From the NCBI RefSeq assembly GCF_036588685.1, contig NC_086384.1, positions 40,300,001 through 40,364,000 of the forward strand: 64,000 nt of DNA, written 5' to 3'. The first letter of the stretch is position 1; every line of letters begins with the position of its first letter. Source of the stretch: Mytilus trossulus (taxonomy: Eukaryota). The position numbers were made by a program, and so were the translations under genes. Under the pieces are notes generated by a model that saw only the letters and a program-made list of their open reading frames with translations, was not told where the DNA came from and searched no databases. Positions 33,305 through 64,000 of the stretch are shown piece after piece.

Positions 33305-33348
33305 GCGTCACTGATCAGTCTTTAGTAGACGAAACGCACGTCTGGCGT
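33305..33348 (+). ncRNA. Hammerhead ribozyme motif, core variant CUGAUCA, in a retrozyme-like copy (~33105-33385)
   Basis: gcgtca-CTGATCA-gtctttagtagac-GAAA-cgcac-GTC-tggcgt. Confidence 0.6.
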
Positions 33349-34235: not shown

Positions 34236-34369
34236 TTATCCAGCTTGTTGTTGTTGTCCTTGTTGTTGTCCCTGTTGTTGCTGTTGTTGGGACAATAATC
34301 TGATTACTTCCTGTTGAATTCCTGTGTTGAATGGGTCGTTGTATAGCTGACACAAAATTCCTCGCTCGC
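34236..34369 (-). CDS. Constant terminal exon 4: Cys-containing segment and Gln-rich tail
   Basis: Acceptor tgtttgcatag|GCGAG; in frame gives (G)ERGILCQLYNDPFNTGIQQEVIRLLSQQQQQQGQQQGQQQQAG-stop (TAA ends at 34236). Confidence 0.82.
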
Positions 34370-37300
34370 CTATGCAAACAAATATTAAAAAGATAAATTA
34401 AAGTCGTACTGAATTACAGGAAAATGGTTCAGCAACACAATTTTATTATTTGCCTTCGGAAAAGATGTATAAATAATTAGGAAGTCTGAAACCCTTCGTT
34501 TTTAACTCACTAAATACATGTATCAGGATCCATACATTTTGATAATTGCAAATTACGCTTGAGAATGCTAAACTTTATCACATTTGAAGCTTGATACTTA
34601 GAAACAAAATTCCTTTTAAATCAGTTTGATACAATTGAAATGAATTAAGGCAGCAGTAAACATCGATTTTTAAATTTCGTTACTCGATAAAGGTATGAGC
34701 TGTTATCTTTTTAATAAACAACCATAGTACATGCACCATTGACTAGCATATAAGATTTCTTGTCCACCATTTTGTGGCAAGTGGTTATGCTTCGATAGAA
34801 CAAGAGTATTGAGTATCCATCAATTTGTATACTTATTTTTTCTGTTACTTTTTTTTCTTTTAAAGGGAATTGATTTACTAGAAAGTGAAATTTGCTATAT
34901 TTGTTTCTATACATTAATTATTTCATCCATATAGAAAATAATTACCTTGGAATCCAACTCCTGTTACATTCGGTGATCTTACATCAACCCAATATTCATT
35001 ATATTGTTTAACAACTGTGGCGCTACAAAACATAATTTTGGAGATTTGAATAATTTGATATATCTTTTTAGAAACTATCAATGAATGAACGTTAAATAAT
35101 TTCCAAAATAATTTGGTCTATCCATAGATGCTTTGACTTTTACCTTCGATTTCTTTACCAAAAATCATTACGAATGTTTCTCGTTCAATGGGGTTTATCA
35201 AATCAAGTGTATTGAACGTTTGACATATATTTCAAAGTACTAATTCTGAAAAAAAATGTGATCATATGAAACAGCTGATGTAATCAGTTCATGAACCTGG
35301 ACTTATGGAAACAAACAAAACACAAGAGAGTCATTTTAGTCCCTTTGGTACTATAAATAAAATATGATAAAATTTGCATATATATCCGGAAACCGAAATA
35401 GTTTTCAAATTTGGAAACTATTTAGTAATACCATAGTTTAAGGGCAGTTCAATTTCGATCTATTCTTAAAAGTCAAATAAATAATATACTTTCGAGCTAA
35501 ACAATATATTAGTATGCCATGCATCAATCTACATATTTTTTGAATGTTTGTTCCAAACTTCTATTGAAACTTTGTTGTCATACTTTCCGAATAAACACAT
35601 ATGAAAAGATCCATTATTGAAACTTAATTCTGATCTCCTTCCAAAACCTTTCAGATTTAACAATGTTATAACAAATTTAGGGAACAGTATTTAATCGACG
35701 CAGATGAAAATCAAGGTCACACAAATAAACTGAGATAATCCGATGATCACTAAACGGTGCTAGACTGTGTGCATTGACAGGGTAATACTCCAAGTCTATG
35801 CCTGGATGATCCGACATGACATTGACACTCGGACAAAATTTCACAATCGTGGATATTACACAATCGATGAAAATCGGGGGTTAGCTAGTTCTTTGTTTTC
35901 GTTTCACTCACATCAATATTGTAACATTTAGTAACTTTTTCTGGCAATTTAAACAAAATATATTTTGAATAGTTGCATAATAGCTAAAGACCATTATACA
36001 ATTGATGTGATCTGAATTTACTGCAAGCTAAATATCTGAAACGTATTAGCGTATATATCGCACTGAAAATCTTTGGAAATTTGACGAAAGACTTAAAACT
36101 ACTGACTTAATAATTGTTCAGTTTTTTATGAAACATATTTATATCAAAATTAGTCATTTGATTTAAGATATATTTATTCGTGACTACTTGAATGGAAGTT
36201 TAACATCCAATTTTCGAATAAAAAAGTGCATTAAATTTGTCTATAAAATTAGATTAACATGTTAGAAAAGGAACTTTCAACAAAAAAAAAACAGATTTAT
36301 TTGTGATTATAATTATAATAAATTTAAACATAAACATGCCAAATTTTTTTTTTTATATTGAACATGAATGCTATTTGTATTTATACACACATTTATATGG
36401 TTTATATATTTCTAAATTGCCGCAAGCTTATTGATTTAAATGATCACGTTTTGAATACACACGTTAAGTAGTTCAAAAAGCCATTAATCAGATAGAACAA
36501 GCAATGCAATAATGACGCCGAACCTTCGAAAATTTTAAATAATACAATCCAAGCTGTCAATTCAATGATTAGGTCAATACTTAAACATATATGTATGCAC
36601 TTATATCAATTAAACCTTTTTAAAATAAAACTAATACAGTTGAACAACAATATATAAGATCGTGTCGATTGAAAAATACAAACGTAAAAATGATATAAGC
36701 GATGAATCATCGAAACTGCAAGTATAGTATATCAGTTTTGAATAGTTGGACAAAAATAATTGTAAAAAACAAAATACGACACTTTTCTTATTACTTGCTC
36801 ACAAAGACTTACGAAAATGTTCAATGGCGTGACATACGTTTAATTTGTTTTTGCTGATTTCATGTTATGACTACAGATCACTATCTTGAATGAATACACT
36901 AATTATCTAATACATCTTCGAGAAATTAAAGTATGATATATCTGAACAAAGTATATATAGTTGTTATACATATTTTTAAATAAAGAGTTGTCTTCCTTTT
37001 ACTAGGAACATTCTCATAAAACATTTGGCATTCAAACTGTGTTAACTGGAGCGCCATTGATCAATCTAATTTAGGTGAACACCTGGTTTCTCTAATTACA
37101 TGTAGTCCGGAAACATTGGTCAGAAACGTGGCCATGCAAGAAATAAATTATTGCTATTTACTTTTAGATATGTTTTACAATTATTACTATTCATGTACTT
37201 TAAAATATTGAAAAATTGTTCTAGCATAAATAACAACTTAACAAAATTTAAATTTAATCATTTTCCATATGTTTTGTAATTTATAAACATTTTGTTAACA

Positions 37301-40300
37301 TATTCACAACATCAACTCATGTCTTCTGACCGAAATTTCATTCTTATTTACTATAAAAGCGCTTAAATTGTATATGAAGTGTTGTTTTCTTTTTTTTTTA
37401 CAGCGCTCCCAATATTTACCCTTGTACTCGTCTATAATGCACACTTACACAAATTGGACATTTCCCAAGTTGCAGCTTGCTGGTGGGTACCAGTCGAAGG
37501 AAACCACATTTTTATCTCTGTTGTTTGTATGTGTAATTCCACCAACACCTCCTACTGCAGCACGACATCTCCTAGCTTGTGAATTGTCATCTAAAGGTCT
37601 AAATGTTCCATAAGCAGGTCTGTTGATGGCTTCCAATGGAAAACCATTTCTTGTTGCTTGTACGAAAAATCCACGGAAATAATCGTTAGGTGCTGCTCTA
37701 AGGGTTACTGAAAACACAAAAAATAATAAAAGTTAAAATAAAATTTATATATATTTGCCTTAATGAAGAACGTCATTTCTGTATTCCTTAAAAACAAGTC
37801 TATCATTGTAGTTCATGTGCCGCTATTTCACTCAATTCTTTGAATATCAATTTGTTCTCCATTTTTTTGTATTTTTTTACTATTTTTGACAGTTATTTAT
37901 TTGCTGGTCCTCTCTTTATTCTCAAGTCTGTTAAACCTAACCAGACCGTCATATATCATCATTTCCATCATGCACATTGTAAATATGGCCTAACGCTTGC
38001 TCCTGTAAACGTACCTCTTAATGGAAAAAATAATTCTCAACGAATTGATTTAGACAAGCCATATGCAGAGAGTTGACGAGGCCTGGCCGTTACGCATGAC
38101 AGAAAAAATACTTTTGTCTACCCAAGGAACATTGTATCTTAGTCGTATTTTGCAAATCCTTTCGAAACGTTGGTCTTCAGTGCTATTCAATGTTGTACTT
38201 TACGTTTGCTTTCAAATTTTCTTGTATTCGATATACACTAATGAGTCTGTTGTAGACGACACGCAGGTCTGTCGAACAGACCTGACGTCTGATGAGTTTA
38301 TTTATTTATCATTGGAAATTGGAATCAAATGTTTGCCTTGGTCTAGTCAGTCATATGACAGTTGTTATCTTATACATGTAGTTTGTTTCTATGAATGTTG
38401 CATTAATTTTTGTTTTTGTTACACTTCTGTGTTCTGTTATTCCCTTGTTTTCCCCGCTTTTGGTTTGTTACCATGATTTGTTTTCTCTTAATCGATTTAT
38501 GACTTGTGAACAGCTGCATACTACTATTGCCTAATTTTATAGAAACTGTGCGCGGGTGACCGATAAATCACACCACTCAAATGTCAGTAATTTCAAGTTC
38601 CTATTGTTTTTTGTTATAAATATCTATCTTTTATATATTTAGATTTTACATATTGTATAAATTTAAGTCTTGCAACATGGCATACATGATGCCTCTAGCG
38701 ACTTGGTATTTAAATTGCAAACAGTAAGAACATCTGTTCAGGTATCTTAGAGTTAAAAGTCCCCAACCAGATCAGACAAAAATACGTTGTGATACATTCA
38801 AACGGATATCGCAGTCGCGGATAAGATATAATGCAGCGTTATAAACAGACATATATTAGCATAACGTACAATGTATTCAATAAGATCAAATAGATTGAAC
38901 CTGTTATTGTTCTTTACATCTCGAAAAGCAAGGGCAGCTCTCCCTTTTTTTTATTTCAACAGCTACAAACTAGATACAACGAATCATAAAGTCATAAAAT
39001 TGGTTATATACCAAAGCTACAACATATCATGATTCTTTTTACCCTGACATTTTACTATGTACGATATAGGTAATTAACATATGTCTTCTTTATATCTTAT
39101 ATCGAATACAGAACTGTCACAAAATATGAACATTAACCACGAATATAAAGATGTTTGTTCACTTTATAGATACACACCTACATGCTCATAATTGTCAAAT
39201 TAATTGTCAAGGAAAATAATTAAAAGTGATGTATACTCTTTCAATACACTAACAAATGTCCTCAGATAAATGTTTCATAACATCTATGGTAATATATGCT
39301 GCATGGATTATTGCATTTTATGAAAGGGAACTGCAATAAATTGTCGTAACAGTATATATGCAATAAATGTACGATGGGCCATTACTGTATAACAAGTTAA
39401 CCGAGGGTAACATGCCAATAAAAACAGGAATATATCTAGAACGGGTATATGTAATGACAAGAAATAATGTCTTCTGAATTGACGGTTCACGCGACATAAG
39501 ATATAAAACAAAAATCTTCTTGAAAAGTAGATATGCCGAAAGGAAAATTTCGATCTTTTAAAATGACAGAACTTACTAATTTTGAATACAATTTATCATA
39601 TAAAATAAATGTTGTGGTTAGGTAATGTTCGTCATTTAAAATATGACCAAATAAACAACTGAAGAGTCATTAATGTACAAATAGGTTATAGATATAGGAA
39701 GATGTGGTGTTAGTGCCAATGAGACAACTCTCCATCCAAATAACAATTTTAAAAAAGGAAACCATTATAGGTCAATGTACGGCCTTCAACACGGAGCATT
39801 TGCTTACACCGAACAACAAGCTATACAGGGCATATGTTTGAATGATACAGATCGTTGTAAGTAGTCTAAATGAGTCCGTTAGTTTTTTCGTTTGAATTGT
39901 TTTACATTGTCTTATCGGGGCCTTTTATAGCTGACTGTATGGTATGGGCTTTGCTCATTGTTGAAGGCCGTACGGTGATCTATAGTTGTAAATGTTTGTG
40001 TCATTTTGGTCTTTTGTGGATAGTTGTCTCATTGGCAATCATACCACATCTTCTTTTTTATATTAACAGAAAATTACAATATTCTGATCTGGAATGAAAA
40101 CTACATTTAATAAAAAAAAAATATTCTAAGAAAACCAAACTCCTATATAGGTAGTTGATACACACATAAGCTGTACTTAGTTTTACAATCATGTTAAACA
40201 TAATTACGTCGGCAATAGATATAACAATATGGTCAAAGGAATATAACTGGCATGCCATAAAACGGAAAAGGGAAAAATGACAACCAACTGTTCAGATGAG

Positions 40301-40985
40301 AAAACACAACATCAGCTTAAAACCGAAGATATATAAAAACAAACCCATTCACAGTCTGGGGATATAAGAAGGGTAGAAAAAGAAAAGATATTAAAACTCA
40401 TATTAAAGTCATCTAGCAACCGACAAAAAAGTGACAAAAAACGACGAAATGATAAACAAAATGCCCTAAACTGAACACTGAGCAATGCTTAGTCTTTTAA
40501 ATCATGAGCTCCTCAAATGATTCAAATAACTAAAGATTATGCTAATTAGTAAACATCTGGATTGAAAGAAATCGTGTGATCAAAAAATAACAACAATATG
40601 AACATGATGAACATTATACTTTTTGAAAATGAGGAAAAAGATTTTAAAAAACACTGTCAGAGACTACAAAAGACTGTCAACGATTATTTCCTTACCCCTT
40701 AATGTTGAAATATCTGGAAAAAAATTAAGTGACTTTACCTCTAATTCTAGATCCTCGTGCACCACTATATTGGGCACCACTGGTTTCCAAAGAATACCCA
40801 CTAGTTTCCATTGACAGTGGATAATAAATTCCAATGTGCGTTGCATTTATTCTAGTTTGATGAATAGGTGTTGGATCTCCACAAGAATTTTCAGGTGCAC
40901 CATTTGGATATCCACTGACAAATGTCAATGCATAATACAAAAAACTGGATGCAATTAAATTTGGCAAAGTGAATTTGGATTTCAT
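34236..40985 (-). CDS. Secreted Reeler-domain protein (putative defense protein-like), isoform using proximal first exon V1; join(40985-40739,37707-37449,35022-34946,34369-34236), 238 aa
   Basis: Manual splicing gives a 717-nt open frame with GT-AG introns of matching phase (1,2,1). Sequence: signal peptide, then YPNGAPENSC...RIR|VTLRAAPNDYFRGFFVQA...GITHTN...FDWYPP...VQFV|ATVVKQYNEYW. These are the characteristic Reeler motifs, followed by a Gln-rich tail. Confidence 0.9.
34946..35022 (-). CDS. Constant exon 3: end of Reeler domain
   Basis: Acceptor ttttgtag|CGCC, donor CCAAG|GTAATT; 77 nt. Encodes (V)ATVVKQYNEYWVDVRSPNVTGVGFQ(G). Too short to appear in the ORF track. Confidence 0.9.
37449..37707 (-). 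CDS. Constant exon 2: Reeler core
   Basis: Acceptor ttttgtgttttcag|TAACC, donor TTTGT|GTAAGT; 259 nt. Encodes (V)TLRAAPNDYFRGFFVQATR...QARRCRAAVGGVGGITHTNNRDKNVVSFDWYPPASCNLGNVQF(V). Confidence 0.92.
40739..40985 (-). CDS. Variable first exon V1: signal peptide + N-terminal Reeler segment
   Basis: MKSKFTLPNLIASSFLYYALTFVSG-YPNGAPENSCGDPTPIHQTRINATHIGIYYPLSMETSGYSLETSGAQYSGARGSRIR-G; 247 nt (phase 1); donor AGAG|GTAAAG. Confidence 0.9.
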
Positions 40986-41127
40986 AATTCAAGTGATATT
41001 CCGCAGTTATTATTTGTTATGGACGTTAGGTCTTTCAGGTAAGTCAAAGGTAACCGTTTTTGTTTTGATGGCTTGTCATCGGATTGTCTTATTTCAGCAT
41101 GATTGATGTATTGGTTATTATTATTGC

Positions 41128-41139
41128 AATCACGTGATT
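41128..41139. promoter_or_regulatory. Palindromic E-box (AATCACGTGATT) upstream of V1
   Basis: Perfect 12-bp palindrome about 145 nt 5' of the V1 ATG; the same TCACGTGA core occurs upstream of V2. Confidence 0.3.
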
Positions 41140-44100: not shown

Positions 44101-44530
44101 TAACATAGAACAATATATGATTTATCATATTTACGGCTGAATTTTACGAAAAATTATTGATAATCTGATTAATTTTCTCAGCCTTGCCACATAAGAAGAG
44201 GTGACTCAAACAAAGAAACTTTGATTAGAGGATGTGTAGTAAATACACCTATTTTATTTTGTGACAAGAAAGCGAGTCTGGTGATTTATTTAAAAGCATA
44301 TAATAAGAGCTATCTTTACTTATTTAATTTTTAAATTCTCATGCATATTCTATACTCAGTAGTCATCACTTAAGTTATAAGGTCGTGTATATAGATCTAT
44401 TGTTTTCAAAATTCGAAATATTACGGATTTCTTATCCCAAGTGTATATTACCTGAGCCGTATTTGGTATAAACTTTTGGAATTTTTGGTCAACTTTGCAC
44501 TTGTTTGAATTTAAAACTAGTTGGATCTGA

Positions 44531-44574
44531 TCATCCCTGATGAGTCTTATGTTGACGAAATGCAGGTCTGGCGT
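44531..44574 (+). ncRNA. Degenerate hammerhead motif (core intact, stem I disrupted)
   Basis: tcatcc-CTGATGA-gtcttatgttgac-GAAA-tgcag-GTC-tggcgt. Confidence 0.45.
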
Positions 44575-44577
44575 ATC

Positions 44578-45130
44578 AAATAAAGGCAACAGTAGTATAC
44601 CGCTGTTCAAAACTCATAAATCCATGGACAAAAAACAAAATCGGGGCAACAAACCAAAACCGAGGGAAACGCATTAAATATAAGAGGAGAACAACGACAC
44701 AACACCGAAACGCAACAGCACACAGAAACGGACCAAGCAACAGACAATACACCACGAGAATAACAAATATAACATCAAAACCAAATACATGAATATGGGA
44801 TAGACAAGTACCGTGCCACGTCTTATCTCAAAAATAAGAGAAAACAGAAACGACTCAACGTTAAAATGCAACACACACACAGAAACGAACAATATTATAA
44901 CAATTGCCATCTTCCTGACTTGGTACAGGACACTTTTAAAGGGAAATAAAAGTGGTGGGTTAAACTGGTTTTAAGGCATGCCAAACCTCGCACTTTAATG
45001 GCACAGTTAAATATAACATTAAAATGAAAACAAAAAATTACAGGACTACAATACAAATAAAAAGCAGAACATATTAGACAAAGAAAAGCATGATCAATAG
45101 ATAACAAAAAGCATCAGGTTTAAAATTCAA
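44578..45130. repeat. Young dispersed repeat, copy 1
   Basis: The first ~380 bp (AAATAAAGGCAACAGTAGTATACCGCTGTTC...AAAAGTGGTGGGTT) are nearly identical to 46901-47285. Older relatives lie at ~38330-38535, 41945-42200 and 43480-43860. Confidence 0.9.
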
Positions 45131-45803
45131 TACGCCAAAGTCAATGTTACACCAGCTGTAACGTGAATAAAAGCCCGATGACCTATATTCTTATTGTATT
45201 CTTGAAAAAGCATGTGATAAACTGCATCTTGACAAATTATCATAACATGCTATGGATTTTAATATAGACACCCCATCTACCTAAACACCAGAATTTTGGT
45301 CTTTTTTGCATAAGCGTCGATGTTGTCCTATTAATAACTGCTCCATGTTGACTAAGCGTGGATTCGCTTGACTGGTGATGAATTCTCAAACGGAGACGCA
45401 TACCTTGTCAAACGATCTGATCTCGTTCGTCTTGGTCATCTTCAATTATTTTGTGTAACCTTGAGAATCAGTGTCCCGCTATGCATGCATATACCGCGTT
45501 TCGAGTCCACGCTTAGCCAGAAAGTCACACTCAGGGGAAAATACAGTCAGTCAAATAACAGATTAGACGAGTGTACTGGTATCTAAGCAACATAATCCCC
45601 GACTTTATGTTACAAGTGAGTCGAGAAACCGACATATCATATCGCTTAAAGATATGTAGCGTTAATTTTGTCGTTCTTTTTCATGTCTCTGTTTGAGCAG
45701 TTTCTGAGTAAAGACAGTCATGTAGTATTTTTTCAACTTAAAAGTTAATGTTTTGAATGAAGCGTTGGAAATTGAACATCTGAAACTCCAATTCATATAT
45801 TAC

Positions 45804-45903
45804 CAGTATCAAAATTCGGGCTACTTGGCATACTTGACATTCTCGCCGACGTGCTGTCTGCTGACAAGCAAACCCAAAATAGTAGTAATACTGAAACTTT
45901 CAT
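45804..45903 (-). other. Possible short signal-peptide-only first exon (phase 1)
   Basis: MKVSVLLLFWVCLSADSTSARMSSMPSSPNFDT-G|GTAATA; 100 nt, phase compatible with exon 2. It lacks GAP-x3-C, and its ATG sits at the edge of a dispersed repeat. Confidence 0.25.
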
Positions 45904-46900
45904 ACAAGTGGGAGGTTTAACTGTTATACCATGTTTAATCCACCATTGTATTACTGTTTCAAAGTAGCGATATGACAGCTGTTCACTTCTTTCGATGGGA
46001 GAAACCTTCATAATAGTCGATTTTATTAACCCCTTCCTGTAATTTCGCAGCTGATTTAGCATTCCGTACGAGTATTTTTAACATGAATGCATTGTTAGTG
46101 GTCATCAAACCCAAATGTTTAATACCAGGAACTATTACATAATTCACATTAACAACGACATCTTTTTAAAAAAATAGAAGGAACGCCTTATGCGGTTAAC
46201 CTCTGAATAAAAAGTTCTGTCATGTCAACTGAATATTTCATATTGTTAGCACATCAAATTAATATAATGCAACTCTGAACAATTAAGATTCCGATATAAA
46301 AAAAAATCATTAAGGACTTTCGATCTAGTGTGATAAACTCAGGTGACCAATAGAAGAGATACATGAGACGATAGTCAAACACATAAGTTGTAACCGAACT
46401 GACAAGACCATGGTATGTTTGGTTAAATATAAAGTGTTAGGATCAGTTACTCTTGATATTCTTACAAACGAAGAGAAAGTCATAAACAATTTCAAAATGC
46501 TCTTATTTATTCCTTAGATTGTTTTTGCACTAAACAACTAATGTAAACAATAAATAATTATTATCAACAAACTTGATATCAACAATATTAATCAGAACTT
46601 TAATAGTTTTAAATAATCAAACAGTTCACAAGTCGTAAATCCACAACTAACCGTGTATTAAAATAAGCCACGTTTCCCTACTAACCTAATATTGTATATA
46701 TACGGTCTCAACGAGGTCGCTTTTAACCAAATTGAATCATATTCCTATATTTGAATCTATAAATGTATAGGAGGTAAGAAAAATGTTGATATACATGAAT
46801 CTTCACATTCGCAACATCTTCAATGTTAATGTATGCCATAAGACTTGTAGATGTAATCAATCTATAAAATTGAAAAGACAATACAATGATGGAATAAAGC

Positions 46901-47285
46901 AAATAAAGGCAACAGTAGTATACCGCTGTTCAAAACTCATAAATCCATGGACAAAAAACAAAATCGGGGCAACAAACCAAAACCGAGGGAAACGCATTAA
47001 ATATAAGAGGAGAACAACGACACAACATCGAAACGCAACAGCACACAGAAACGGACCAAGCAATAGACAATACACCACGAGAATAACAAATATAACATCA
47101 AAACCAAATACATGAATATGGGATAGACAAGTACCGTGCCACGTCTTATCTCAAAAATAAGAGAAAACAGAAACGACTCAACGTTAAAATGCAACACACA
47201 CACAGAAACGAACAATATTATAACAATGGCCATCTTCCTGACTTGGTACAGGACACTTTTAAAGGGGAATAAAAGTGGTGGGTTG
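46901..47285. repeat. Young dispersed repeat, copy 2
   Basis: Near-identical direct copy of 44578-44961; explains the near-duplicate ORFs 44674-44910 and 46997-47290. Confidence 0.9.
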
Positions 47286-50099
47286 AACATTTGATCAGTA
47301 GCCTGTAAGATTTATTTAATTTACACATTTTGTATTTTGGGGTCACCTCGATGGAAGATGGTAAGTGTTAGACAACAGACTATGGTGATACATGAAGTTA
47401 TGGATGGGTATTACAAAATTAAGGATAATGGACAAAAAAGAACTAAAACTAGAGAAAGAGAAAACATTGGCAAAATAGAAAAACAAACGAGAATAGTTAG
47501 TTTCTAGATTATGTAGTATACGGAATGATTGAATAGCAAAGTAAGGAATACAGAAACATTGTCTAAAACACGTGAAACAGAAATTAAGACAACACACCAA
47601 TTGTAGATCTAGAAAGATGTTTGAAAGAAGGAGGCATGCCTAGTATGCCTATATTTACCTGAAATGGGACGGAAACTTGGTCATAATTTTAAGTTTCAAA
47701 ACAGTAATATTCTTTATCCTTAAAAAATGTTACTTAAATTGTGGTCAAACTGGCCTTTAAAATGAATTCATTTGAACAATTTACCTGGAACAAAACAGTG
47801 CATTTTTTGTTAACACATTTTACGTTCATATGATACACATGCAGCAATGAACTGACAAATTGAAAAATTGGACAAACAAGACTAAGATAAAATTTGCATC
47901 TGAAGAGTGTCTGAATAAATAATATTTAACACATGCACTGTCATCCCTAATAAGTAAACGATTATGAATATCATACGTTAAGTCAGTAATTGAATATCAT
48001 TACTGTACCATAAAGAATAAAATACAATGCTTTCAGGAATTGAGATTTCCCGAAATTGATAAATCACATAGGTGACCGAGTATGTTTTTGTGTAAAACAA
48101 ATGAAAGAAAGAACCATTATGAAACAAACACATCCAGCATGTCCAATATACGAGAACTACAACGATTCTGTTTGGTGTCATGGTTATAAAATATGCTCGG
48201 TCTATTTACATAAATTAACGTAGATGAAAGAGAAAATATAATTTATGATAGATTATTAGGAGACAAAAACGCATGATTTATAATTATAATTATTTATACT
48301 AAACTTATTCTTCCTGTCAGACGGCAAATTTACTACCTAGAACCTAATTTATAAGGTGGTACGTATACATAACGATAAAGGGAGATGACTCTGTAAAATC
48401 AGATGAACGTTTTAATCACGTTCTATTGAGAAGGAAATATTGAGTTTCTAAATGATCAACATTAGTTTTTCTCAGAATGTTATATTTTCAATGTAATTTG
48501 TCCAATAAAGTGTATGGTTCAACTTTTCTGAAATATATATGTTTGTCAAAGGGTCAATGTTGATATTTTATAAAATTGTAACGGTGTTTGCATTGGTACT
48601 CTTGCATATTATATATTTTGAGTAATGTTTTATGACATGGTATTCAGAAGCCAAAGTACAAGTGTATGTATACATTTGTGTTACATAGATTTATTTCTGG
48701 CAAACTATAATGACTTTTTTTAATATCCTATGTCTAAAACTTCTTTGTTTAACGAATTCTCAGAGTTTGACCAAATCATTCAAAAGTTAACTTAAAGATT
48801 TGATATTTTAGTCGCACTTCAGTGGTATAGGTTGAGAGACATAAGCCCGAAAGCTACTACTGTGGATTTCCCCCAGGTTTCTATGTAAAGAAATGATCAT
48901 ATCTTGTTCATGTGTATGAGGTAGCAGTACACTGATGAAACTTGAGATCGGTACTAACCCGAATAATACTCTGTTATTTAGCACGATGTTCTTTTTATTA
49001 AACCCCATCTAGACCCTTATTCAGGTGACATTTGAGATCGGTTTATTTGTTTGTACTCACCAAAATAATACTCTGTTATTTTGCACATTATACTCTATTT
49101 TGTAAACCCCCCAATGAACCTCCTTCATGGGGAAAATGTCACTAATAAATAACAAATGTTAGGAACAATAAAATACAACTTTATGTTGACAATTATATCA
49201 TTTTACTTGTAGATTCGCCGGACATTCATTACTTAAGACGAAGAAAAAAGACTTTTAGTACAATTTATTCCTAATATTACACAACTGCAAAAAAAAAGAG
49301 GTAGTAGGAACCATGTGGATACTCAGACGCATAAGTCGAAGAAAACAGACATGATAGAAAATGCAACTAATATAATTTCTTTTCACATTTGAAAAACAAT
49401 TAACAATACAGAACAGCACTTCAGAATATTTTCAATGTATGATAAGAACACTATTCGTATCGCAATATCTGAAATAGAATTAGATATAAACCCATGGAAT
49501 CGTATTATTGTTGCATCTAAAGTACAAGAAACAACATTTAACGGTGACAGTTTAAATAAAAAGTCTGCAGGGTCTTGTTTACCATTTGTATTACGTGTAA
49601 ATCGTCTTCTATATACTAAATTTAGACTTTTATCATCCCATAACGTTACGGTATGTCCGCTTTTCTTCCATTATTCAACAGAGGCTTAGGTTATTATATC
49701 AATAAACTTACCAACTGGATGCATGTACCAGACTTAAAATTTTGTACTCCTGACGTGTGTTTTGTATACAAAAGACTCATTAATGACACTCGTTTCAAAA
49801 AAGTTCGAAAAAGTTAAATATAGTTCAAAGTTGAAGAACATTTAGATTATAAATTCCGAGATGTTTTACTAAATTTAGCTACTGAAATCTGTTCCTTGGG
49901 TAGAAACTCAATATTAATTTGAAAAACTGCAATCTTTTGTGAACATTTAGTTTATAATTAGGACCACCGAATGCTGACTTTCAAAACAATGATCTTAGAT
50001 AAAAGAAAACTTTCACTTTTATAAATAATATTCCTTATACAATTATTAAACCATATAATGATATCACGCGAAATCACGCGGTAACTAAGAATACATTAC

Positions 50100-50358
50100 C
50101 TCTGATATAGTCCTGTTTTGGCTTCATTTTTGGTAGAGTTAAATTTTTGTATTCCAGTTTACTAACTGTTAATGTGTAATTCATTTCAGAATTGTTCATT
50201 GGAAGATACTGTCCCATGTGTGTTTCATTTAAAACTTTCGTATGGAAAGTTGCAGACGACAGACAAGTGTTAATTGGTGCTCCATTCCAAAAACAATATA
50301 CAGTTGTTAAACAGACGATCACAAGAATTTCAGTAACTTTTGCCAATTTTTTCAGCAT
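50100..50358 (-). CDS. Variable first exon V2: signal peptide + N-terminal Reeler segment (predicted 242-aa isoform if spliced to exons 2-4)
   Basis: MLKKLAKVTEILVIVCLTTVYC-FWNGAPINTCLSSATFHTKVLNETHMGQYLPMNNSEMNYTLTVSKLEYKNLTLPKMKPKQDYIR-G; 259 nt (phase 1); donor AGAG|GTAATG. Clearly paralogous to V1 (NGAP-x3-C, N-x-TH-x-G-x-Y-x-P, terminal IR|G). Confidence 0.8.
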
Positions 50359-50420
50359 CGTGGATATTTTTCAAGGAAGATTGTTAGAAATGGACGAACA
50401 CTTGGAACCTGTTATACGGT

Positions 50421-50430
50421 GTCACGTGAT
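50421..50430. promoter_or_regulatory. E-box GTCACGTGAT upstream of V2
   Basis: TCACGTGA about 65 nt 5' of the V2 ATG, among several TGACA/TGTCA motifs. Confidence 0.3.
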
Positions 50431-53400
50431 ATTATGCCAAATTGACATGAGCGACACATCAATTAGTAAGAAATGTCATTCTCTTGTCAATGAGACATGT
50501 TGATTAAATGTCAATTACAAGCAATTGCACTATATATAACAAAGTAAGTTTGAGGAAATACAATGGACGGATTCTTGTCATTCAATTGAAATAATATGTT
50601 TTTCCCAAGGACACCCATAATACATATATATATAAATCTAAACGATTAAATGCAATTTACAAGCATGCTGTACATAATCATAGTACTTCCGGCGTGAGAA
50701 CGGTGCTGGAAAGTTAGTCCCACTACCAATGCATGAAGGTCTGAACTGGGGGGGAGGGGGATTTCCATTTCCTTATTCTTTCAGTCATGTTTTCTATCAT
50801 TTTTACCTTTTTGGCCATTATTTTCTATTCTTTATTTTTAGGTGTTTTTTTTGTCTTAATATATTCTTTATATTTGTGCCCATAAATTTGGATGATTCAG
50901 GGGGAACTAATTCAAATAACGAAAAATACAAATTGCACACACATTTATTCTAAAGAAAATAACCCTTTATTATACCCCCTTAACATTTATAATTTAAACA
51001 TTGAATTTAACTAGTTTAAACCTGTGTGAATGCAACCTAATTAGCTGACGAACTGATTTATGGAAATTGAACTTGCTTATTATGTAAAAAAACTAATGAT
51101 ATATTGAACCTAGAACGTATACGTGTCTTCAATATAAGCCAAGGTGGGAGTGTTAACGGACATATATAGGTTTTTTCCATTCTTTGCATATGTTGTGATG
51201 CATTTATGTGAAGAAGAAGTAATGAAATATAGGTCACAGAGGTTATTCTTAAGCTACAGGTTGTAAAAATATAAATTATATATGGATTATACAAAGAACA
51301 AGCGTCAGTGTGTTAATAAAAAGTAAACTAAATGATAGAAATAAGCTGCTTTCAGAATATGAGAAGAAAATGAGTTCGACGTCCTTCTCCCCCTGCTTTT
51401 AAATAAAACAGAAGAAAAAAAATTCTGTCGATTCCTTTATCTTTTCTTTTTATTTTCAGAGTTACTTCCCCTGAGTACAAAAAAAATAAGATTGAAGAGA
51501 ATTTGTTATTAGACATTTTGTAACAGGTGTTTGTCTTCAATATCTAATAAATCAAAAGTAATTACATAAGTATGAATATTCAATAACAATCACTTGAAGT
51601 AAAATAACGATATTTAGTAATATACAGAACAAAATAAAGACATTTTACAAGATTTCATACCTGCCCCCGGCTAACAAAGACAAGCCTTCAATAATAAAAA
51701 ACCTCAAATTTGATAATTTTATAATCATAAATGTCAAAGGATATTAATTATACATCACGATTGACAAGCTAATTCACAGGGAGTTTTCTTTTCAGTGACG
51801 CCATGACAATAAATGGTACAACTAGTCATATTCGTGGTTTACGTACAAACAAAAAGGCGATATTGACTACAATGATTTTTTTCTGTATAAGCGGTCATAT
51901 AAGAAAGAAAAAATCCCAAGCAGCATGGTTTTTTTTTTTAACTTCAAATATTTTTAATTGATTTACATTACATGTGTTAAATGTACATGTAGAGGGCGTC
52001 GCAGTTTATCTTTAAATAAGTCTTGTCTCATAAATTTGTGGTGAACACATGCATATTTCTGGCATACGACTGTCACACATTATTGTTTATGTCATATTTC
52101 ACTACTATTCTTTATTACATACCAAAAATAAATTGTGCAGTATAATACATGTAAATTATGATCTATTATTATACAACTTTTTCTCTAGCATTCAAGAAAA
52201 ATCAGGTCCATTTAAAAAAAAATCAAAATTTACCATTGTTTCAACCAATGCTTTGTCGAGTGTTTCACTCCATCACTAAACTACTCTTCAAATCGGAATT
52301 TCCAGTCTTAAATTATGTAAATAAATTATATAAACATGTACATGTATACTGTACATGAACTGCACTGGTTGATACTTTAGTCTGAGAGAACGTGATTATA
52401 AATATATTTCTTAGTTGCAATTGGCCTTTTTTAACTAGCTTCCAGTACAGGAAACTGCAGGTTCTCTTAATTATGGCGATATTTGGTGTCGGTTGTTCTA
52501 ATTTTTGCTGATTTTGTGTTGCGTATTCATCTCTTGAGTTTATTTAATTGCAACTGATTTTTGACAGTTTGTTCTTATTGTGTGATGTTGCGCTGCTGTC
52601 CCAGATTATAAAGAGGGTTTAACACCCACAAACATGCTTAACCCCGCTACGTTCTGTATGTGCGTAAGTCAGAAGTTAAAATTGTGTTGTAGTTCTCCAG
52701 TTTTAAAAAAGATTCACGCTTTTCATGTCGGGGTCTTTTATAGATAACAATACGGTATGAGATTTTTTTTTCATTGTTGAAGGTCGAGCAGTAGTATATA
52801 ATACTTGCTAATGTTCATTTCATTTGACCTCTGGTTGATAGTTGTCTTGTTGACAATCATAGAACATCTCGTTAATTTTATGTTTCAAGATACACAAAAC
52901 AACAAAATAAAGTTTGTTTACATCATCAAGATAACATTGTTCTGATTGTAAATAACTAAATGACATGCTTCAGAACATATGTATGTTCTACTTAAACATA
53001 TACCATTCATGTATAAATCTTATTTCCTTGTGCATGACGTACCTTGTCAATCTAATTGGTTTTTCCTAATGACTTTAAATTGAAAAAAAAACTCAATCTT
53101 TCCTATTTTGGCCATCGCTTTAAGCATGTTCAGAATAAGGGAAAAATACGACATGCCGAAATCTAATAGTTCATCTTTTGACAACTTTACAGTCATAAAG
53201 CATGTCAGTCATACATATACTAGTCAACTATAAAAACGATACAAGGCAATGAATTATCAATATATAAGAAAAAACACATCGTTTAAACACCAACAATGTA
53301 AACACTCGCCAATTGGTAAATGTATCATGTTTACAAAGTTGCTTTCTCACCAAAACATATAAATTAAGACAAAAAACTCTACATTCTTGATTTGTTCGTA

Positions 53401-56400
53401 ATTTGATTTATTTCCAATATTGTTTTTAACCGAGTTCAGAAAGAAATTATGTAATTTTTGAACGTACAGTTTGAAATAAAAAACATGGTCGGATTAGACT
53501 ATCGATTTTCTCAATGGTTGCCTTAAAACCAAAATAATATTTCTGATTTTGGCTAATTTTTAAAACATATGCGTCTGGAGAAAAACAAAACACACCACAC
53601 AAATATAAAGCAGGCCTGTTTGAAATTTCACTGAATTTCAACACACCACTGAATATTCCCGCGTTGCATAAAACATAAAAAGCTTCTGTTTAATTGCGTG
53701 TCGTTTTCAGTCAGGCTATGTGTTATTGGATCACGGGATTTGTTTTCTTCTCAGCAACAACAAAAACAACATTTAATACTCGATTTTAGATCATAAACAT
53801 AAACTTGACCTAACAGTTGTAGACGGACAACTTTGAAAAAAATCAATCTACTTGCAAAATTTTGCGGCGAAAATCAGTTGACTAGACATGTGCGCATGCT
53901 CTCCCGGAAGTGACATTTACTTTCTCTGTTGTCTATTTCCTTTTCAAGGAGTTACTCTTCACAACCGCAATATCGAAACAGACAATGGGTTTCCTTTGAA
54001 CAAAATTTTGCTGATCTTTCATTATTTCTCTTCTTTACTAACACACTGATCCAAGATGTATAACACCATAATTTTACACCCTTTACACCCAAAAACACGA
54101 ATAAGTCCTACTTAATACATAATTTTACAGAAAATCGTGATGGTCTAAGTTGCTACAATACTTGTTCATACAAGCACTTAAATTTGTTTGATGGTTTAAT
54201 ACAAAAGATTTCATATGAAGGCCTACTCTTACGACCATTCTGATATACAAGTACATAAAAGTACGTTTAAAAAATTAAAGATGAATTGGATGAGGTTTAC
54301 ATAACAGATAATAATAATTGGCTAAAAATAGAGAATGAAGAGGAGGACATACAGATTAATCGGCAGCCTTTTAATTGTTGCGTTCTGCTTTGAAGTCGGG
54401 TTGTTGTCACTCTGACACAATTTTCGAAGATGGTAACAAGGGTTAAGTAATAATAAAAAATGATATAATTGGGGGATAAATCTTACAAATAATGAAAATT
54501 GGATAAATAAAATAAAGAATACAGAAAAATGGCATACAGATTAAAGAAAACAAAAATAAAAACACTCATTCAGACCCTCAATAAACCTTTTAAATTGTGA
54601 AATTGCAAGCCATTTTCTGTCTATCTCTTTTAAGACATGGCAAGTAGTCCATGCTTTCCTACAAAAAACTAGAATATTACTTTGATAAAAATAAAATGAT
54701 GCAGAAACAAGGATCCTGTTCAAGGAACAATTTTGGGGAAAACTTGACACTGTAATAAATTGTATCTATTAACCTCTTCTGAAAGTTGAAATAAAAGTTG
54801 AAATAATGTACCTAAATTAATAATATATTACCGATTTGAAGTGGAAATTTGCGTGGCATTGTAAATGCTGCCATAAAAAATAGTAAATTAAAATAAAAGG
54901 TGAATCTGCCAAAAAAGGTGAAAGTTTCTTAGAAATAATATACAAAAAAGAAGATTGTTATAATATACAGTACGTGTATATTGTGTATATTCTTTTTTTT
55001 TTTACGAAAATATTAGTTTATGAGAGGCTTGTGCTAAATGCTTATTTTAACCGAAGCGTTCCTGAAATTGACTGCTATGACATCAATTCAATGAAATCAC
55101 AATAGTCAAAAAGACTAACTTTTTAAAAGTCCTACATGTAGTTACTATAGTAAGCAGATTAACTGAGAATGTAGACAAATAATACTTTCATCCAATTATT
55201 TAATTTTCGGTGAGTTTACCAGCCTAGTTAAGCCCAAAATTGAATCTGTTGCTTTATATTGGCATGTCATCAATGGTTTAGTATAGGAGTGCTCGGTAAA
55301 CATTACGTACTATCTACTTATGCAGAATCTGTTTTGCTAAGCGGAAAACCGGAAAAAGAGTCGTAATCTAAACTATTGATGACATGAAAAGCAAAAGTGT
55401 GAACAGACTAACACATAGATATTTACGAACGGAAACAACCACCCTCCCAAAAGACCTATACTACATGTATCTGAAATTATTTTATCAGTCAATACGACTT
55501 TCGGAAATATTTTGGTATTAAATCCTACCCTAATACTAACAAAAACAATTTCTTATTAGTTTTAACCCTCACTACGTGCCCTTTTAAACTATAAATATAA
55601 ACATACTTTAAAAAAATATTTTCCTTTTTAAGTCGATATCTTTTAAAAACGTCATCAGTAGAAGTCGAAACATACACATGACTTTGTTGATTGATTAATT
55701 GATTGATCATTTATATTAATATCTGAATTTATCGATTGATCAATTGATCGGTTGTGTCTATTAACATTGTTTTTTTTGTGGTACACGACTATTTCCGGTT
55801 CGTATATTATTATTACATTTAAAGTCAGACATGAGACAGAATAGATAAAAGCGATGTTTAATAACCAAGCACTGTTACTAAAATACAAGATGACGGTAGA
55901 GTGTCATATTGAAAACAAACTGTCACCGTTTAATAGTTCAAAGAAATGAAAAGGTTTCAGTAAATGAAAAATAAGTATAAAGTTCTTAAGATTGAACACT
56001 TTGAACTTATAATTCCCCGGGCAAAGTTTACCAAGTTAAATTTGACTTATCTTTCAGGTTTCTTTGATATATTTGTTCAAGTTTTGATGTATTTGTACAT
56101 CTTGTCAAATCTTTGGGTTTTAGCCTTTCTTGTGAGTCGGTGTATTTTCAACAAAAATGCTTCAGAGGCATCAAGTACCAAATGTATAAAGTGCTTAAGT
56201 CCTTGATAGCTATATATAGTATATGAAATAAATCAAAATGTATTACTAGTATATAGAAAAATAATACCCACATGTATACAGTGTTCCAAAGTACAACATT
56301 TATTTTTAAAGACCATGCAGGCTAAGACTGGTAAAATAATGATTTGAAGCAGATGACGTAAATGTTACAAAAATTCTATAGGACCACGTTATCAACGTCA

Positions 56401-58433
56401 ATAGTTTGGCTTTATAAGGTTAGTGATTGCGTAAGGCCAATGCGTTTAGACCTTGCAAACAGCAAAGTTGCTTTATATCCTTTTTAAACCTTTTCTGATG
56501 AATCTTCATGAACTGTTATGAAGTATTTGCCACTGGAAGAAATACAACCAACAACCAATCAACAATTGGTCTGAAGCTATAGTTATTGACGACAATATAA
56601 CTAAATGAACTTTATGATCCGAGGAAAATAAACATGTCCTACCATATCTTCCACATTTAGAAAACAATAGTATATATTGCCGAGGTGTATTTCTCGAACA
56701 GAAGTATGTCATCACATGGTTCATTTACATACTGACTGTTACATTAGGAACCAATCTTGCAAAAATCAGTAAAGTGAGAAGGGGAGATAAAGCTTTTTTT
56801 GGTCTTAACATAAAAGAAACAAAAAGGAAAACAAACATGTGTTTAACATGTGGTTAATATAGTTGTAAGTATTTCTCGTTTGTTATATAAACAAGACCGT
56901 CGGTTTCCCTTTTTGAACGGTTTTAAACAAAGCTGTTCGGTGTGAGCCGATGCTCCTCGTTGAAGGCCGAGCTTTGACCCATACGTGTAGGTTCTCTTTT
57001 ACAACGTGTGACTTGGATGGAGAGTTGTCCAATTGGCACTCATATGGCATCGTCTTGTATTATATAAGGTTCAAGTTAGTCAGAATATTTAAAACAAATT
57101 TTAACGAGTTACCATGACAAAAAAAAATCAATGACAAAGTATGATGTATACGTTTGTAAAATGTCTTCTTTGAACTTGTTTAATCATCTTTTAAATATAG
57201 TTTAGAATAAGTCAAGCTGCGTACCTAAAAACCTACTTTATATTGTGTAAATAGCTACATGTACATGTATGCTAAAGCTTCTCTTAAATTATATGTTGTT
57301 TTCTTTGTTGCGAACGTTGTTTCAAGAATGTCAAAGTGAATGGTGAACTACATTTTTACATTTAGCAGTTAACTTCATGTTCATCAATGTTTTGACGATC
57401 TTGTCGATAACCATAGATATAGGAAGATGTGGTGTGAGTGCCAATGAGTCAACTCTCCATCCAAATAACAATTTAAAAAGTATGACTATTTTCATATTCC
57501 CAGTTTTTGACACCGGAGTATATATATATTTTGACATGTTGAGAACTTACTCTGTAGTAGTACTCGGTCAAGTAAGAGCAACTAAATCGAGTAAAACCAG
57601 GCATTTGTTCAATAGATGCAATCTAGGAAAATATTTAATATATTCCGATGATTTTATCGTTTACAAGAAACGTAAAACAATTATTTTTTTTCCATAATCC
57701 AAGATTGTATAAAAAAAATAATCTTTTACTCGCTCTTACTAGGACGAGTACCAGAATGTCCTTATACAGGCAGTTGATAACCTGACGAAAATTGTCAACT
57801 ACGGCGTCAAAATCCATGAAATGAAAACATGCCATGGCTTATCGTCAGCATGTATATCAGAAACGGATGTTAACATGTATGAATTTTTTCTCATTTTATT
57901 AACTGAGTCAAACGTATCATAATTCACCAAAACTATGTGTTTTTTTATAATTTTTTAAGTGTTACAGACTACAATGTCTCTTGGCGAACCTCCTGATACT
58001 ACGTATTAATGAATTGCAGTTACAAGGAATATCTACATTACAATGTCTTGACGTTCAAAAGAGAATACATTTGAGAATTGAAATGAGGAATATGTTAAGG
58101 AGACAACAACCAGACAAACTGCCAATTGGTCTTCAATTCAGCGAGAAAAACTCGCACCACGATGAGGTTGGCCTCAGCTGGCTTCTAAGTTAAAACATCC
58201 CCATATTTTTTTAAATATTGACATGTTTTCATTTTTGATATAATCAAGATTTACCAAAGCAGAGTTGGGTTACCTTTAGGGTATCAAATATATAAGTGGA
58301 ATATTTTGTTTTGTGGTAGACTAAGTCATTTCGCAAATTTATACTAAAATATTTTCTCAATCGATAAACTTAACTAAAAATGCTACCATGACAGATACCA
58401 CATCATACATACAAAGATTAAAATTTTGTATTT

Positions 58434-58477
58434 GCGCCAGATGAGTTTTTCGTCTACAAAAGACTCATCAGTAACGC
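58434..58477 (-). ncRNA. Hammerhead ribozyme motif immediately downstream of the V3 splice donor (intact CUGAUGA core, degenerate stem III)
   Basis: Reverse complement gcgtta-CTGATGA-gtcttttgtagac-GAAA-aactc-ATC-tggcgc. Confidence 0.55.
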
Positions 58478-58525
58478 TCGAATAAAAAATGTAAATAAGG
58501 CCAAAAAAAGTACGAAGAAACTTAC

Positions 58526-58739
58526 CTCGGAGTGATTGTGGGTTGAACTGTCCTGTCTCAATTCGATAACCATGAGGAGCAGGATTTCTTGGCCGTGCAT
58601 TGTGACCAGGCCTTAATATAACATTTCTACCGTCCAAACGGTCATATTGACAAAAAGCGTCGGGAGCACCACTGCTGTAAGTATTTACGTCACTTACAAA
58701 TAAAACCAGGGAATAAATTGTCAGAAAATAACAGTACAT
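58526..58739 (-). CDS. Variable first exon V3: signal peptide + N-terminal Reeler segment (predicted 227-aa isoform if spliced to exons 2-4)
   Basis: MYCYFLTIYSLVLFVSDVNT-YSSGAPDAFCQYDRLDGRNVILRPGHNARPRNPAPHGYRIETGQFNPQSLR-G; 214 nt (phase 1); consensus donor CGAG|GTAAGT. YSSGAP-x3-C...P-x-H is the typical Reeler N-terminus. Confidence 0.8.
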
Positions 58740-63378: not shown

Positions 63379-64000
63379 GCGACATCAACTGGTTCAGAGA
63401 TAGAATGTTTCGTCAAAATAGATTCTTTTTTCAAAAAAGTATTAAAGGGCGACACTTACAAACTTCTGATGGAAAAGTCAGTACCATGTAAAAAGCAATT
63501 TTGCCAACTTTTCAAAAATAAATTATTTACGATTCTATAAACACTTAAAAGAGTTTACTATTTAAGATTTAAAGTGTGAAGCTCGCTGTTTGAAAGCGAA
63601 TGATATTGACTGTCTTCAAATAAATGAATATATTAAGATATATACAAGATATATAAGATTTTATTGATATAAAAATCCAAAATCTGGATTGTCATCAACA
63701 CATACACAAAGAACAAACAAACAGTAATCATTACAATCAATGATATGTACATACAATGGTAATATATATTTTCTTTCTTATCTATCTATTTGACTGAGGA
63801 GGTACAGTTTTACATCATAGTTATACAATTTATAAACTAAATAACGTAAAATAGCTTAAGTTAGTTAACGTCTGAACTTGTACATCTCACTAATACCTTT
63901 TATGCAACATTTACTGACATCTTAACCATTACTTCGAAATATGAGGTGAAATTTTTCTATGTCTGAAAGATTATTGAAAGATGGTAAAATATCTGAATTA

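What the first reader, a model, noticed from the sequence alone, without database searches (positions are those of the whole stretch)
34236..58739. Variable-first-exon array spliced to one constant region: a protocadherin/UGT1A-like architecture for a secreted Reeler defense protein
Seen in sequence: three divergent exons (V1 40985-40739, V2 50358-50100, V3 58739-58526) lie on the same strand about 8-9 kb apart. Each is an intact frame of ATG + hydrophobic signal peptide + [YF]xxGAP-x3-C + Y-x-[LI]-x motif + terminal [IL]R. Each is 3n+1 nt long (247, 259, 214) and ends in G|GTAA. All three join the single exon 2 (cag|TAACC) in frame as ...R-V-T-L-R. By eye I found only one set of exons 2-4, and none between the V exons. 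Established: tandem variable first exons with their own promoters spliced to shared constant exons are known for vertebrate clustered protocadherins and UGT1A, and for chelicerate sDscam. Secreted Reeler-only proteins act in insect innate immunity. Inference: this locus makes at least three isoforms (238, 242, 227 aa) by promoter choice. I know of no description of this for a Reeler gene, but I cannot check the literature. More V exons may lie beyond position 64000.
Basis: partly seen in the sequence, partly recalled or inferred. Interest (0 to 1): 0.93.

Follow-up and report, generated by a model that had tools for sequence, protein, structure and literature searches.

The report
Three alternative first exons, Reeler gene
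A mussel gene for a small secreted Reeler-domain protein has three divergent first coding exons that each join one shared set of downstream exons; this is real and conserved from mussels to scallops, but public gene annotation already lists it as three isoforms and it is a small example of a known gene layout.

Summary
V1 (40985-40739), V2 (50358-50100) and V3 (58739-58526) are open minus-strand exons of 3n+1 nt. Each ends in G|GTAA, and each is in frame with one exon 2 (37707-37449), exon 3 (35022-34946) and exon 4 (34369-34236).

tBLASTn and profile-HMM scans of 134 kb (20 kb below to 50 kb above the window) find exactly three V exons and one constant set. The window matches the Mytilus trossulus RefSeq chromosome. 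Its isoforms X1 (242 aa, V2), X2 (238 aa, V1) and X3 (227 aa, V3) match the window's exons at 100% identity.

M. edulis has the same triple, and two of the three models were found for M. galloprovincialis. Two scallop species carry four isoforms with identical constant parts. V2-type and V3-type exons each form well-supported cross-order clades, so the array predates the mussel-scallop split.

Immune function was also not tested.

It is a new, apparently unpublished member of a known kind (homologous alternative first exons), already captured by annotation and far smaller than protocadherin or UGT1A arrays. Interest is moderate.

The parts
58526..58739 (-). V3: most upstream alternative first coding exon (214 nt, phase 1). 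It encodes a signal peptide, GAPDAFC...PGH and the strand YRIE, and ends LR.
   Evidence: Open frame; donor GAG|GTAAGT; 100% identical to residues 1-71 of RefSeq isoform X3, P0031; belongs to the V3-type clade with scallops and oysters, support 100/100.
50100..50358 (-). V2: middle alternative first coding exon (259 nt, phase 1), with four N-glycosylation sequons and a basic loop.
   Evidence: Open frame; donor GAG|GTAATG; 100% identical to residues 1-86 of RefSeq isoform X1, P0041; V2-type clade with scallop and pearl oyster, support 95/99; sequons and pI 9.2.
40739..40985 (-). V1: proximal alternative first coding exon (247 nt, phase 1).
   Evidence: Open frame; donor GAG|GTAAAG; 100% identical to residues 1-82 of RefSeq isoform X2, P0035.
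37449..37707 (-). Constant exon 2 (259 nt), the core of the Reeler domain. Its shared acceptor is ttgtgttttcag|TAACC and its donor is GT|GTAAGT.
   Evidence: Sequence; Pfam PF02014 E 1.2e-10; the only such exon in 134 kb; the only Reeler hit within about 2 Mb.
34946..35022 (-). Constant exon 3 (77 nt), the end of the Reeler domain (ATVVKQYNEYWVDVRS...).
   Evidence: Borders read; 100% match to all three isoforms.
34236..34369 (-). Constant exon 4 (134 nt including TAA), a helical Q-rich tail.
   Evidence: Borders read; 100% match; helices at residues 188-224 and 203-238 in the two models.
41130..41137 (.). Palindromic E-box TCACGTGA, 145 nt upstream of the V1 ATG; a candidate promoter element.
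   Evidence: One of only two copies in the 64 kb window; absent upstream of ten paralogous Reeler first exons. A promoter role is inferred, not shown.
50422..50429 (.). Palindromic E-box TCACGTGA, 64 nt upstream of the V2 ATG; a candidate promoter element.
   Evidence: The second of the two copies in the window. A promoter role is inferred, not shown.

Best explanation
This is one gene on the minus strand for a secreted single-Reeler-domain protein. It has three homologous but strongly diverged alternative first coding exons, in the order V3, V2, V1, followed by one constant set (exons 2-4).

A transcript starts at one V exon. That exon's phase-1 donor (AG|GTAA) is joined to the single exon 2 acceptor. 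Any V exon lying downstream has no acceptor of its own and is removed with the intron (3.0, 12.4 or 20.8 kb).

Each V exon supplies its own signal peptide, the N-terminal arm with GAPxxxC, the first beta strand and the loop up to the middle of strand 2 (R|VTL). The three proteins of 238, 242 and 227 aa therefore share about two thirds of the Reeler sandwich and the Q-rich helical tail. They differ in the N-terminal third, in glycosylation (1, 4 and 0 sequons) and in charge.

Shown here: the exons, their phases, the uniqueness of the constant set, identity to annotated isoforms, and conservation of the V types across bivalve orders. Inferred: that each V exon has its own promoter, that all three mRNAs are made in this species, and that the isoforms differ in ligand or tissue.
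For: - The V exons are open with matching phases and donors.
- There is one Reeler exon 2 with a strong acceptor.
- No other constant or V exon lies in 134 kb or near the locus genome-wide.
- RefSeq isoforms X1-X3 of M. trossulus are 100% identical to the window's exons, on a contig of the same length, 60,198,110 bp.
- Constant parts are identical among the isoforms in each of five species. V parts are 22-34% identical between types within M. trossulus and 50-52% identical within a type between mussel and scallop.
- V3-type and V2-type exons form cross-order clades.
- Full-length V1-type and V3-type proteins sit on contigs of 780-2017 nt, too short to hold the introns, so they are spliced transcripts in other bivalves.
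- No acceptor-like pyrimidine tract plus AG lies within 400 nt upstream of any V ATG, and in-frame stops precede each ATG.
- The only two TCACGTGA copies in the window sit 145 and 64 nt upstream of the V1 and V2 ATGs.
- The fold is Reeler, with the exon junction inside strand 2.
Against: - The V2-to-exon-2 and V3-to-exon-2 junctions therefore rest on RefSeq and other gene models, whose supporting evidence I could not inspect.
- For the V2 type I found only annotation models and unspliced genomic ORFs, no transcript-sized contig.
- Transcription starts are unknown.
- The E-box argument is post hoc, and V3 lacks that motif.
- The N-terminal arm is poorly modelled (pLDDT below 50 at residues 19-55 of the V3 isoform), so structural statements about it are weak.
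Confidence: 0.87

Rival explanations
1. The same three V exons and constant exons are used, but the choice is made by mutually exclusive splicing from one shared upstream promoter or non-coding leader exon (Dscam-like), not by three promoters.
For: Transcription starts were not measured, and the annotated 5' UTRs could not be inspected.
Against: No acceptor-like site lies within 400 nt upstream of any V ATG. Each V exon carries its own ATG and signal peptide. V1 and V2 share a proximal TCACGTGA that is otherwise absent from the window.
Confidence: 0.07
2. Only V1 is used. V2 and V3 are orphan first exons left from decayed tandem duplicates, and the annotated isoforms are products of homology-driven gene modelling.
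For: No junction reads were seen here. Only genomic read-through ORFs of V2 (P0042, P0043, P0059) were found for Mytilus in read assemblies.
Against: The mature V2 part is identical across three Mytilus species. V3 is 90-100% identical to the window's exon in the three species' models. Orthologous V2-type and V3-type exons with the same donor phase persist in scallops, pearl oysters and oysters. An unused exon would not stay open at 50% identity over that distance. V3-type is the only type seen in oyster transcripts.
Confidence: 0.05
3. These are ordinary tandem genes: V2 and V3 have private downstream exons, either too diverged to recognise or lost through assembly collapse.
For: Tandem Reeler genes with private exons do exist elsewhere in this genome, for example at C12:16.15-16.20 Mb.
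Against: Profile HMM and tBLASTn find nothing better than E about 0.4-1.3 in the intervals. The intervals share only short dispersed repeats. Constant parts are identical among the isoforms in each of five species and assemblies.
Confidence: 0.01

Closest known systems
Clustered protocadherins and UGT1A (vertebrates); sDscam (chelicerates, PMC4835542)
   Same: Tandem homologous 5' exons lie on one strand. Each has its own start codon and a donor of the same phase, and each is joined to a single shared set of downstream exons. Downstream variable exons are removed with the intron.
   Different: There are only 3 exons here (4 in scallops), against about 9-100 in those arrays. The variable exon encodes a signal peptide plus one third of a single domain, not whole ectodomains or a substrate-binding domain. 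Separate promoters are not shown. There is no evidence of stochastic, combinatorial or self-recognition use.
Tandem-exon-duplication-derived alternative exons in general (PMC8373072)
   Same: Homologous duplicated exons are used in a mutually exclusive way, so that part of a domain is substituted.
   Different: Here the substituted exon is the first coding exon and includes the signal peptide. The case concerns a bivalve Reeler gene, for which I found no description.
Arthropod secreted single-Reeler proteins: Noduler, shrimp LvReeler1-3 (PMC12113285), crayfish PcReeler (PMC10149183), tick PIXR (PMC5543126)
   Same: A signal peptide followed by one Reeler domain. The RefSeq names 'putative defense protein 1/3' come from this group.
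   Different: The abstracts of those papers describe separate genes or molecules and mention no alternative first exons. An immune role for the mussel gene is untested.
Gastropod shell matrix protein SMP1 (PMC12277549; bioRxiv 10.1101/2023.03.18.532128)
   Same: Signal peptide + Reeler domain + low-complexity tail in a mollusc. This shows that such proteins can be matrix components rather than immune factors.
   Different: SMP1 is reported as gastropod-restricted. Orthology to this gene was not tested, and no isoform array is described for it.
F-spondin reeler domain (PDB 3COO, 2ZOT, 2ZOU)
   Same: It is the closest solved fold (Foldseek E 1e-9, target-normalised TM-score 0.61-0.67; profile E 7e-9).
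   Different: About 21-23% identity; it is one domain of a large multidomain matrix protein.

Membership tests
Reeler domain proteins (Pfam PF02014) | Sequence match to the Reeler profile above the curated cut-off | tested here: met
   Exon 2 alone scores 42.4 bits against a cut-off of 21, and 45.7 bits in the genome scan. All full-length relatives carry PF02014.
Reeler domain proteins (Pfam PF02014) | Beta-sandwich fold like the solved reeler domain | tested here: met
   The AF2 model of the V2 isoform (pLDDT 72.6) has F-spondin reeler domains as its top Foldseek hits. The N-terminal arm is of low confidence.
Variable-first-exon / constant-exon genes (protocadherin, UGT1A, sDscam type) | Several homologous 5' exons in tandem on one strand, each with its own ATG and a donor of the same phase | tested here: met
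   profile E 6e-27, 2e-24 and 8e-23 for the three exons.
Variable-first-exon / constant-exon genes (protocadherin, UGT1A, sDscam type) | One shared set of constant exons, with none between the variable exons | tested here: met
   tBLASTn and HMM scans over 134 kb; genome-wide Pfam scan.
Variable-first-exon / constant-exon genes (protocadherin, UGT1A, sDscam type) | Each variable exon is joined to the constant exons in mature mRNA | tested here: inconclusive
   Annotated proteins for all three joins match at 100%, and the constant parts are identical. No reads or transcripts of this species could be examined.
Variable-first-exon / constant-exon genes (protocadherin, UGT1A, sDscam type) | A separate promoter in front of each variable exon | not testable with these tools
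   Only hints: no upstream acceptor, and TCACGTGA close to V1 and V2.
Variable-first-exon / constant-exon genes (protocadherin, UGT1A, sDscam type) | A large array giving a diverse repertoire | tested here: not met
   Exactly three V exons, with none in a further 50 kb upstream; four in scallops.
Arthropod Reeler immune proteins (Noduler/Reeler1 type) | Secreted protein consisting of a signal peptide and a single Reeler domain | tested here: met
   Hydrophobic N-terminal helix at residues 2-18 and 2-24, and one Reeler domain. No formal signal-peptide predictor was run.
Arthropod Reeler immune proteins (Noduler/Reeler1 type) | Binding of microbes or induction by infection | not testable with these tools
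   No expression or binding data were available. Mollusc Reeler proteins are also reported from shell matrix.

The most novel reading that the evidence does not exclude
An exon-swapping module at least as old as the mussel-scallop split (and so older than the Pteriomorphia crown) lets one bivalve gene make three or four Reeler domains with different N-terminal faces, glycosylation and charge. Each would be driven by its own promoter: a MITF/TFE-type E-box for V1 and V2, CCAAT-type for V3. Each would be specialised for a different tissue or ligand, such as microbial surfaces or shell matrix. That would make it a small, hard-wired recognition repertoire of a kind not yet described for Reeler proteins.
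Probability: 0.35. Interest if true: 0.55.

Novelty: new member of a known kind. Interest (0 to 1): 0.38.

Why it matters
It is a clean, deeply conserved invertebrate example of homologous alternative first exons that replace part of a single extracellular domain together with the signal peptide. It warns that the bivalve entries named 'defense protein 1', 'defense protein 3' and 'ferric-chelate reductase 1-like' are isoforms of one gene, which matters for expression studies and proteomics that count them as separate genes. It also offers a tractable test of what the N-terminal third of a Reeler domain contributes to binding. It does not open a new class of mechanism.

Tried and rejected
The shared constant exons there are inferred from identical protein parts.

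Exons were searched one by one by reference, and full-length comparisons used database proteins.

**Searches that gave nothing useful**
- A search restricted to the V2 part returned only its own cluster.
- Weak hits at 56946-57047 (E 0.4-0.8; it crosses the exon 2/3 border without an intron and lies in a dispersed repeat) and at window-equivalent position 108181-108231, beyond the window end (E 0.4), were judged noise.
- Pfam did not recognise any V exon alone.
- Four literature searches found no description of the array.

**Readings rejected**
- Tandem genes, relic exons and assembly collapse; see the rival explanations.
Full report
**1. The observation**

- V1 is 40985-40739 (247 nt).
- V2 is 50358-50100 (259 nt).
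- V3 is 58739-58526 (214 nt).

All are 3n+1 nt long and end in GAG followed by GTAAAG, GTAATG or GTAAGT. Each begins with ATG and a hydrophobic stretch. Each carries [YF]xxGAPxxxC and a Y-x-[LI]-x strand, and ends in IR or LR.

Exon 2 begins at 37707 behind a long pyrimidine tract and cag and ends at 37449 before GTAAGT. It is a significant Pfam Reeler match on its own (E 1.2e-10, 42.4 bits against a cut-off of 21). From I read exon 3 as 35022-34946 and exon 4 as 34369-34236 (TAA included).

V1 and V2 are detectably homologous (tBLASTn E 7e-9). V3 is only weakly similar to them pairwise (E 3.8).

**2. Is there only one constant region?**

- tBLASTn with exon 2 finds nothing else in the window (next hit E 1.3).
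- A six-frame Pfam Reeler scan of the whole 1.30 Gb assembly lists the exon 2 hit. It lists no other hit on this contig nearer than 42.46 Mb, about 2 Mb away.
- I fetched 20 kb below and 50 kb above the window. I searched the 134 kb with the variable and constant parts of 15 homologues and with profile HMMs of both parts.
- The V profile hits exactly three frames (E 6e-27, 2e-24, 8e-23; next hit E 1.1). The constant profile hits exactly exons 2, 3 and 4 (E 6e-52, 3e-12, 2e-14; next hit E 1.3). The strong hits are partly by construction, because Mytilus sequences are in the profiles. The informative result is that nothing else is found.
- The intervals between V exons share only short dispersed repeats, not duplicated gene-sized segments, and hold no other long conserved frames.

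So the 'private exons' refutation fails, and no fourth V exon lies within 50 kb upstream.

**3. What the databases already hold**

A search of 1.8 billion representative proteins with exon 2 found a 249-aa scallop protein whose N-terminus resembles V3. Searching with it returned a family of bivalve proteins named 'putative defense protein 1/3' or 'ferric-chelate reductase 1(-like)', many labelled isoform X1-X4.

Cluster look-ups show three Mytilus trossulus RefSeq proteins with consecutive accessions:
- XP_063408506.1 (X1, 242 aa)
- XP_063408507.1 (X2, 238 aa)
- XP_063408508.1 (X3, 227 aa)

They lie on a contig of 60,198,110 bp, which is the length of the contig that holds the window. Aligned to the window, each segment of each isoform is 100% identical. 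The longer exon 2 alignment reads 90% only because it runs on into the intron. X1 is V2+constant, X2 is V1+constant and X3 is V3+constant.

The pattern recurs in other bivalves:
- M. edulis has the same triple (XP_071147848 to XP_071147850).
- For M. galloprovincialis I found V2 and V3 models (VDI14104, VDI14103) on one 196-kb contig.
- Argopecten irradians has four isoforms. So does Mizuhopecten yessoensis. The types are V2-type, V1-type and two V3-like types.
- Pinctada has a V2-type model and Tegillarca a V1-type protein. Oysters show V3-type proteins.

**4. Shared exons, and the age of the V types**

Within each of five species the part from R|VTL to the C-terminus is identical in all isoforms. 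The mature V parts are 22-34% identical between types within M. trossulus.

Between mussel and scallop, V parts of the same type are 50-52% identical, not far below the 63-67% of the constant part.

A maximum-likelihood tree of mature V parts gives these groupings:
- a V3-type clade of mussels, scallops and oysters (support 100/100);
- a V1+V2 clade (100/100);
- within that, a V2-type clade of mussels, scallop and pearl oyster (95/99);
- V1-type sequences unresolved at the base.

The sequences are short (50-64 residues), so only these deep splits should be trusted. The duplications that made the V types therefore predate the split of mussels and scallops. From general knowledge, not tested here, that split is several hundred million years old. 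Exons that were not used would not have stayed open with conserved motifs, donor position and phase over that span.

**5. Transcript-level evidence**

Indirect evidence exists for two of the three types. Full-length V3-type proteins of Crassostrea gigas lie on many read-assembly contigs of 1-2 kb. A V1-type protein of 223 aa lies on a 780-nt contig. The Tegillarca V1-type protein of 270 aa lies on a 1295-nt contig. These contigs are too short to contain the introns, so they are spliced mRNAs.

For the V2 type I found only gene models and unspliced genomic frames (P0042, P0043, P0059-61). The V2 and V3 junctions in M. trossulus thus rest on RefSeq models whose evidence I could not inspect.

**6. 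How it most likely works**

Every V exon has its own ATG preceded by in-frame stops. No pyrimidine-rich acceptor-like site lies within 400 nt upstream of any of them. A transcript that starts at V3 or V2 therefore has no way to include the downstream V exons and must splice to exon 2. This is the same logic as in protocadherin and UGT1A clusters.

As a hint of separate promoters, the palindrome TCACGTGA occurs only twice in the 64 kb, at 41130-41137 and 50422-50429. Those sites are 145 and 64 nt upstream of the V1 and V2 ATGs. The motif is absent upstream of ten paralogous Reeler first exons and occurs at about 0.03 per kb in 164 kb of other loci. This is a post hoc observation. V3 instead has two ATTGG (inverted CCAAT) motifs at roughly -150 and -235, and a differently flanked CACGTG 438 nt upstream.

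Structure predictions of the V3 and V2 isoforms (pLDDT 70 and 73) show four elements in order:
- a signal-like helix;
- a poorly modelled arm carrying GAPxxxC;
- a first strand (Y-x-[LI]-x) encoded by the V exon;
- a second strand split by the intron (R|VTL).

The remaining strands and a C-terminal Q-rich helix come from the constant exons. The fold matches the F-spondin reeler domain.

The isoforms thus exchange the N-terminal third of one domain. They also differ in sequons (1, 4, 0) and pI (7.3, 9.2, 10.0) of the mature V part. This agrees with the scan's other note on this stretch.

**7. Function**

The 'defense protein' names derive from arthropod single-Reeler proteins with reported antibacterial roles (PMC12113285, PMC10149183, PMC5543126). 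In gastropods a signal peptide + Reeler + low-complexity protein is a shell matrix protein expressed at the mantle edge. Proteins named 'ferric-chelate reductase 1' also appear in mollusc shell and mantle studies. Which role this gene has, and whether the isoforms differ in role, is open.

**8. Comparison and novelty**

- In layout the locus works like a protocadherin, UGT1A or sDscam cluster.
- It fails the feature of a large repertoire, having three exons.
- Promoter choice is unproven.
- It fits the broader known class of homologous, mutually exclusive exons derived from tandem exon duplication (PMC8373072).
- I found no paper describing it for a Reeler gene or for bivalves, but RefSeq already lists the isoforms.

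I rate it a new member of a known kind. It is well supported and of moderate interest, mainly for its deep conservation and because differently named database entries are isoforms of one gene.

**9. Limits**

- No reads, no transcription starts, and no DNA of other species were examined.
- Paralogue loci could not be fetched.
- The tree rests on short sequences.

Noticed in passing
window 9752-12617: A minisatellite of 47 copies of a 61-bp unit (88% matches), with G+C raised to 42% against about 31% around it.
   Followed up: partly
window 44577-44965 and 46900-47288: Two direct 389-bp repeats, 98.7% identical and 2.3 kb apart, lie in the V2-to-V1 interval. This could be an LTR-like pair of a small element or a recent local duplication. 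Both carry a hydrophobic minus-strand ORF.
   Followed up: no
window 41130-41137 and 50422-50429: The only two TCACGTGA palindromes in the window lie 145 and 64 nt upstream of the V1 and V2 start codons. From memory, not checked here, this is the MITF/TFE-type E-box. The motif is absent upstream of ten paralogous Reeler first exons.
   Followed up: partly
window 33136-33378, 44447-44584, 49734-49960, 58403-58517: Copies of one dispersed repeat. Two of them sit just downstream of the V2 and V3 donors, 140 and 9 nt into the intron.
   Followed up: no
window 15404-15745 (-) and 21191-21619 (+): ORFs that look, by my reading of their motifs, like fragments of retrotransposon reverse transcriptase. 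The left half of the window shows no other ORF of 110 aa or more that looks gene-like.
   Followed up: no
G000:C12:16.15-16.20 Mb (L009, L011-L014, L017, L020, L024, L025, L028) and C14:14.56-14.59 Mb: Clusters of Reeler genes whose exons repeat in the order first-middle-last. They look like ordinary tandem genes with private exons, in contrast to the locus studied.
   Followed up: no
window 50359-50367: M. galloprovincialis and M. edulis V2 isoforms start three codons further upstream (MST-MLKK). In the window that ATG reads ATA, so the M. trossulus isoform is three residues shorter.
   Followed up: partly
P0010 / P0074 (unionid freshwater mussels): A Reeler protein with a more diverged constant part (41% identity to exon 2) has a V1-like N-terminus (GAPDNTC...NATHTGIY). 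The V1/V2-type arm may therefore be older than Pteriomorphia.
   Followed up: partly
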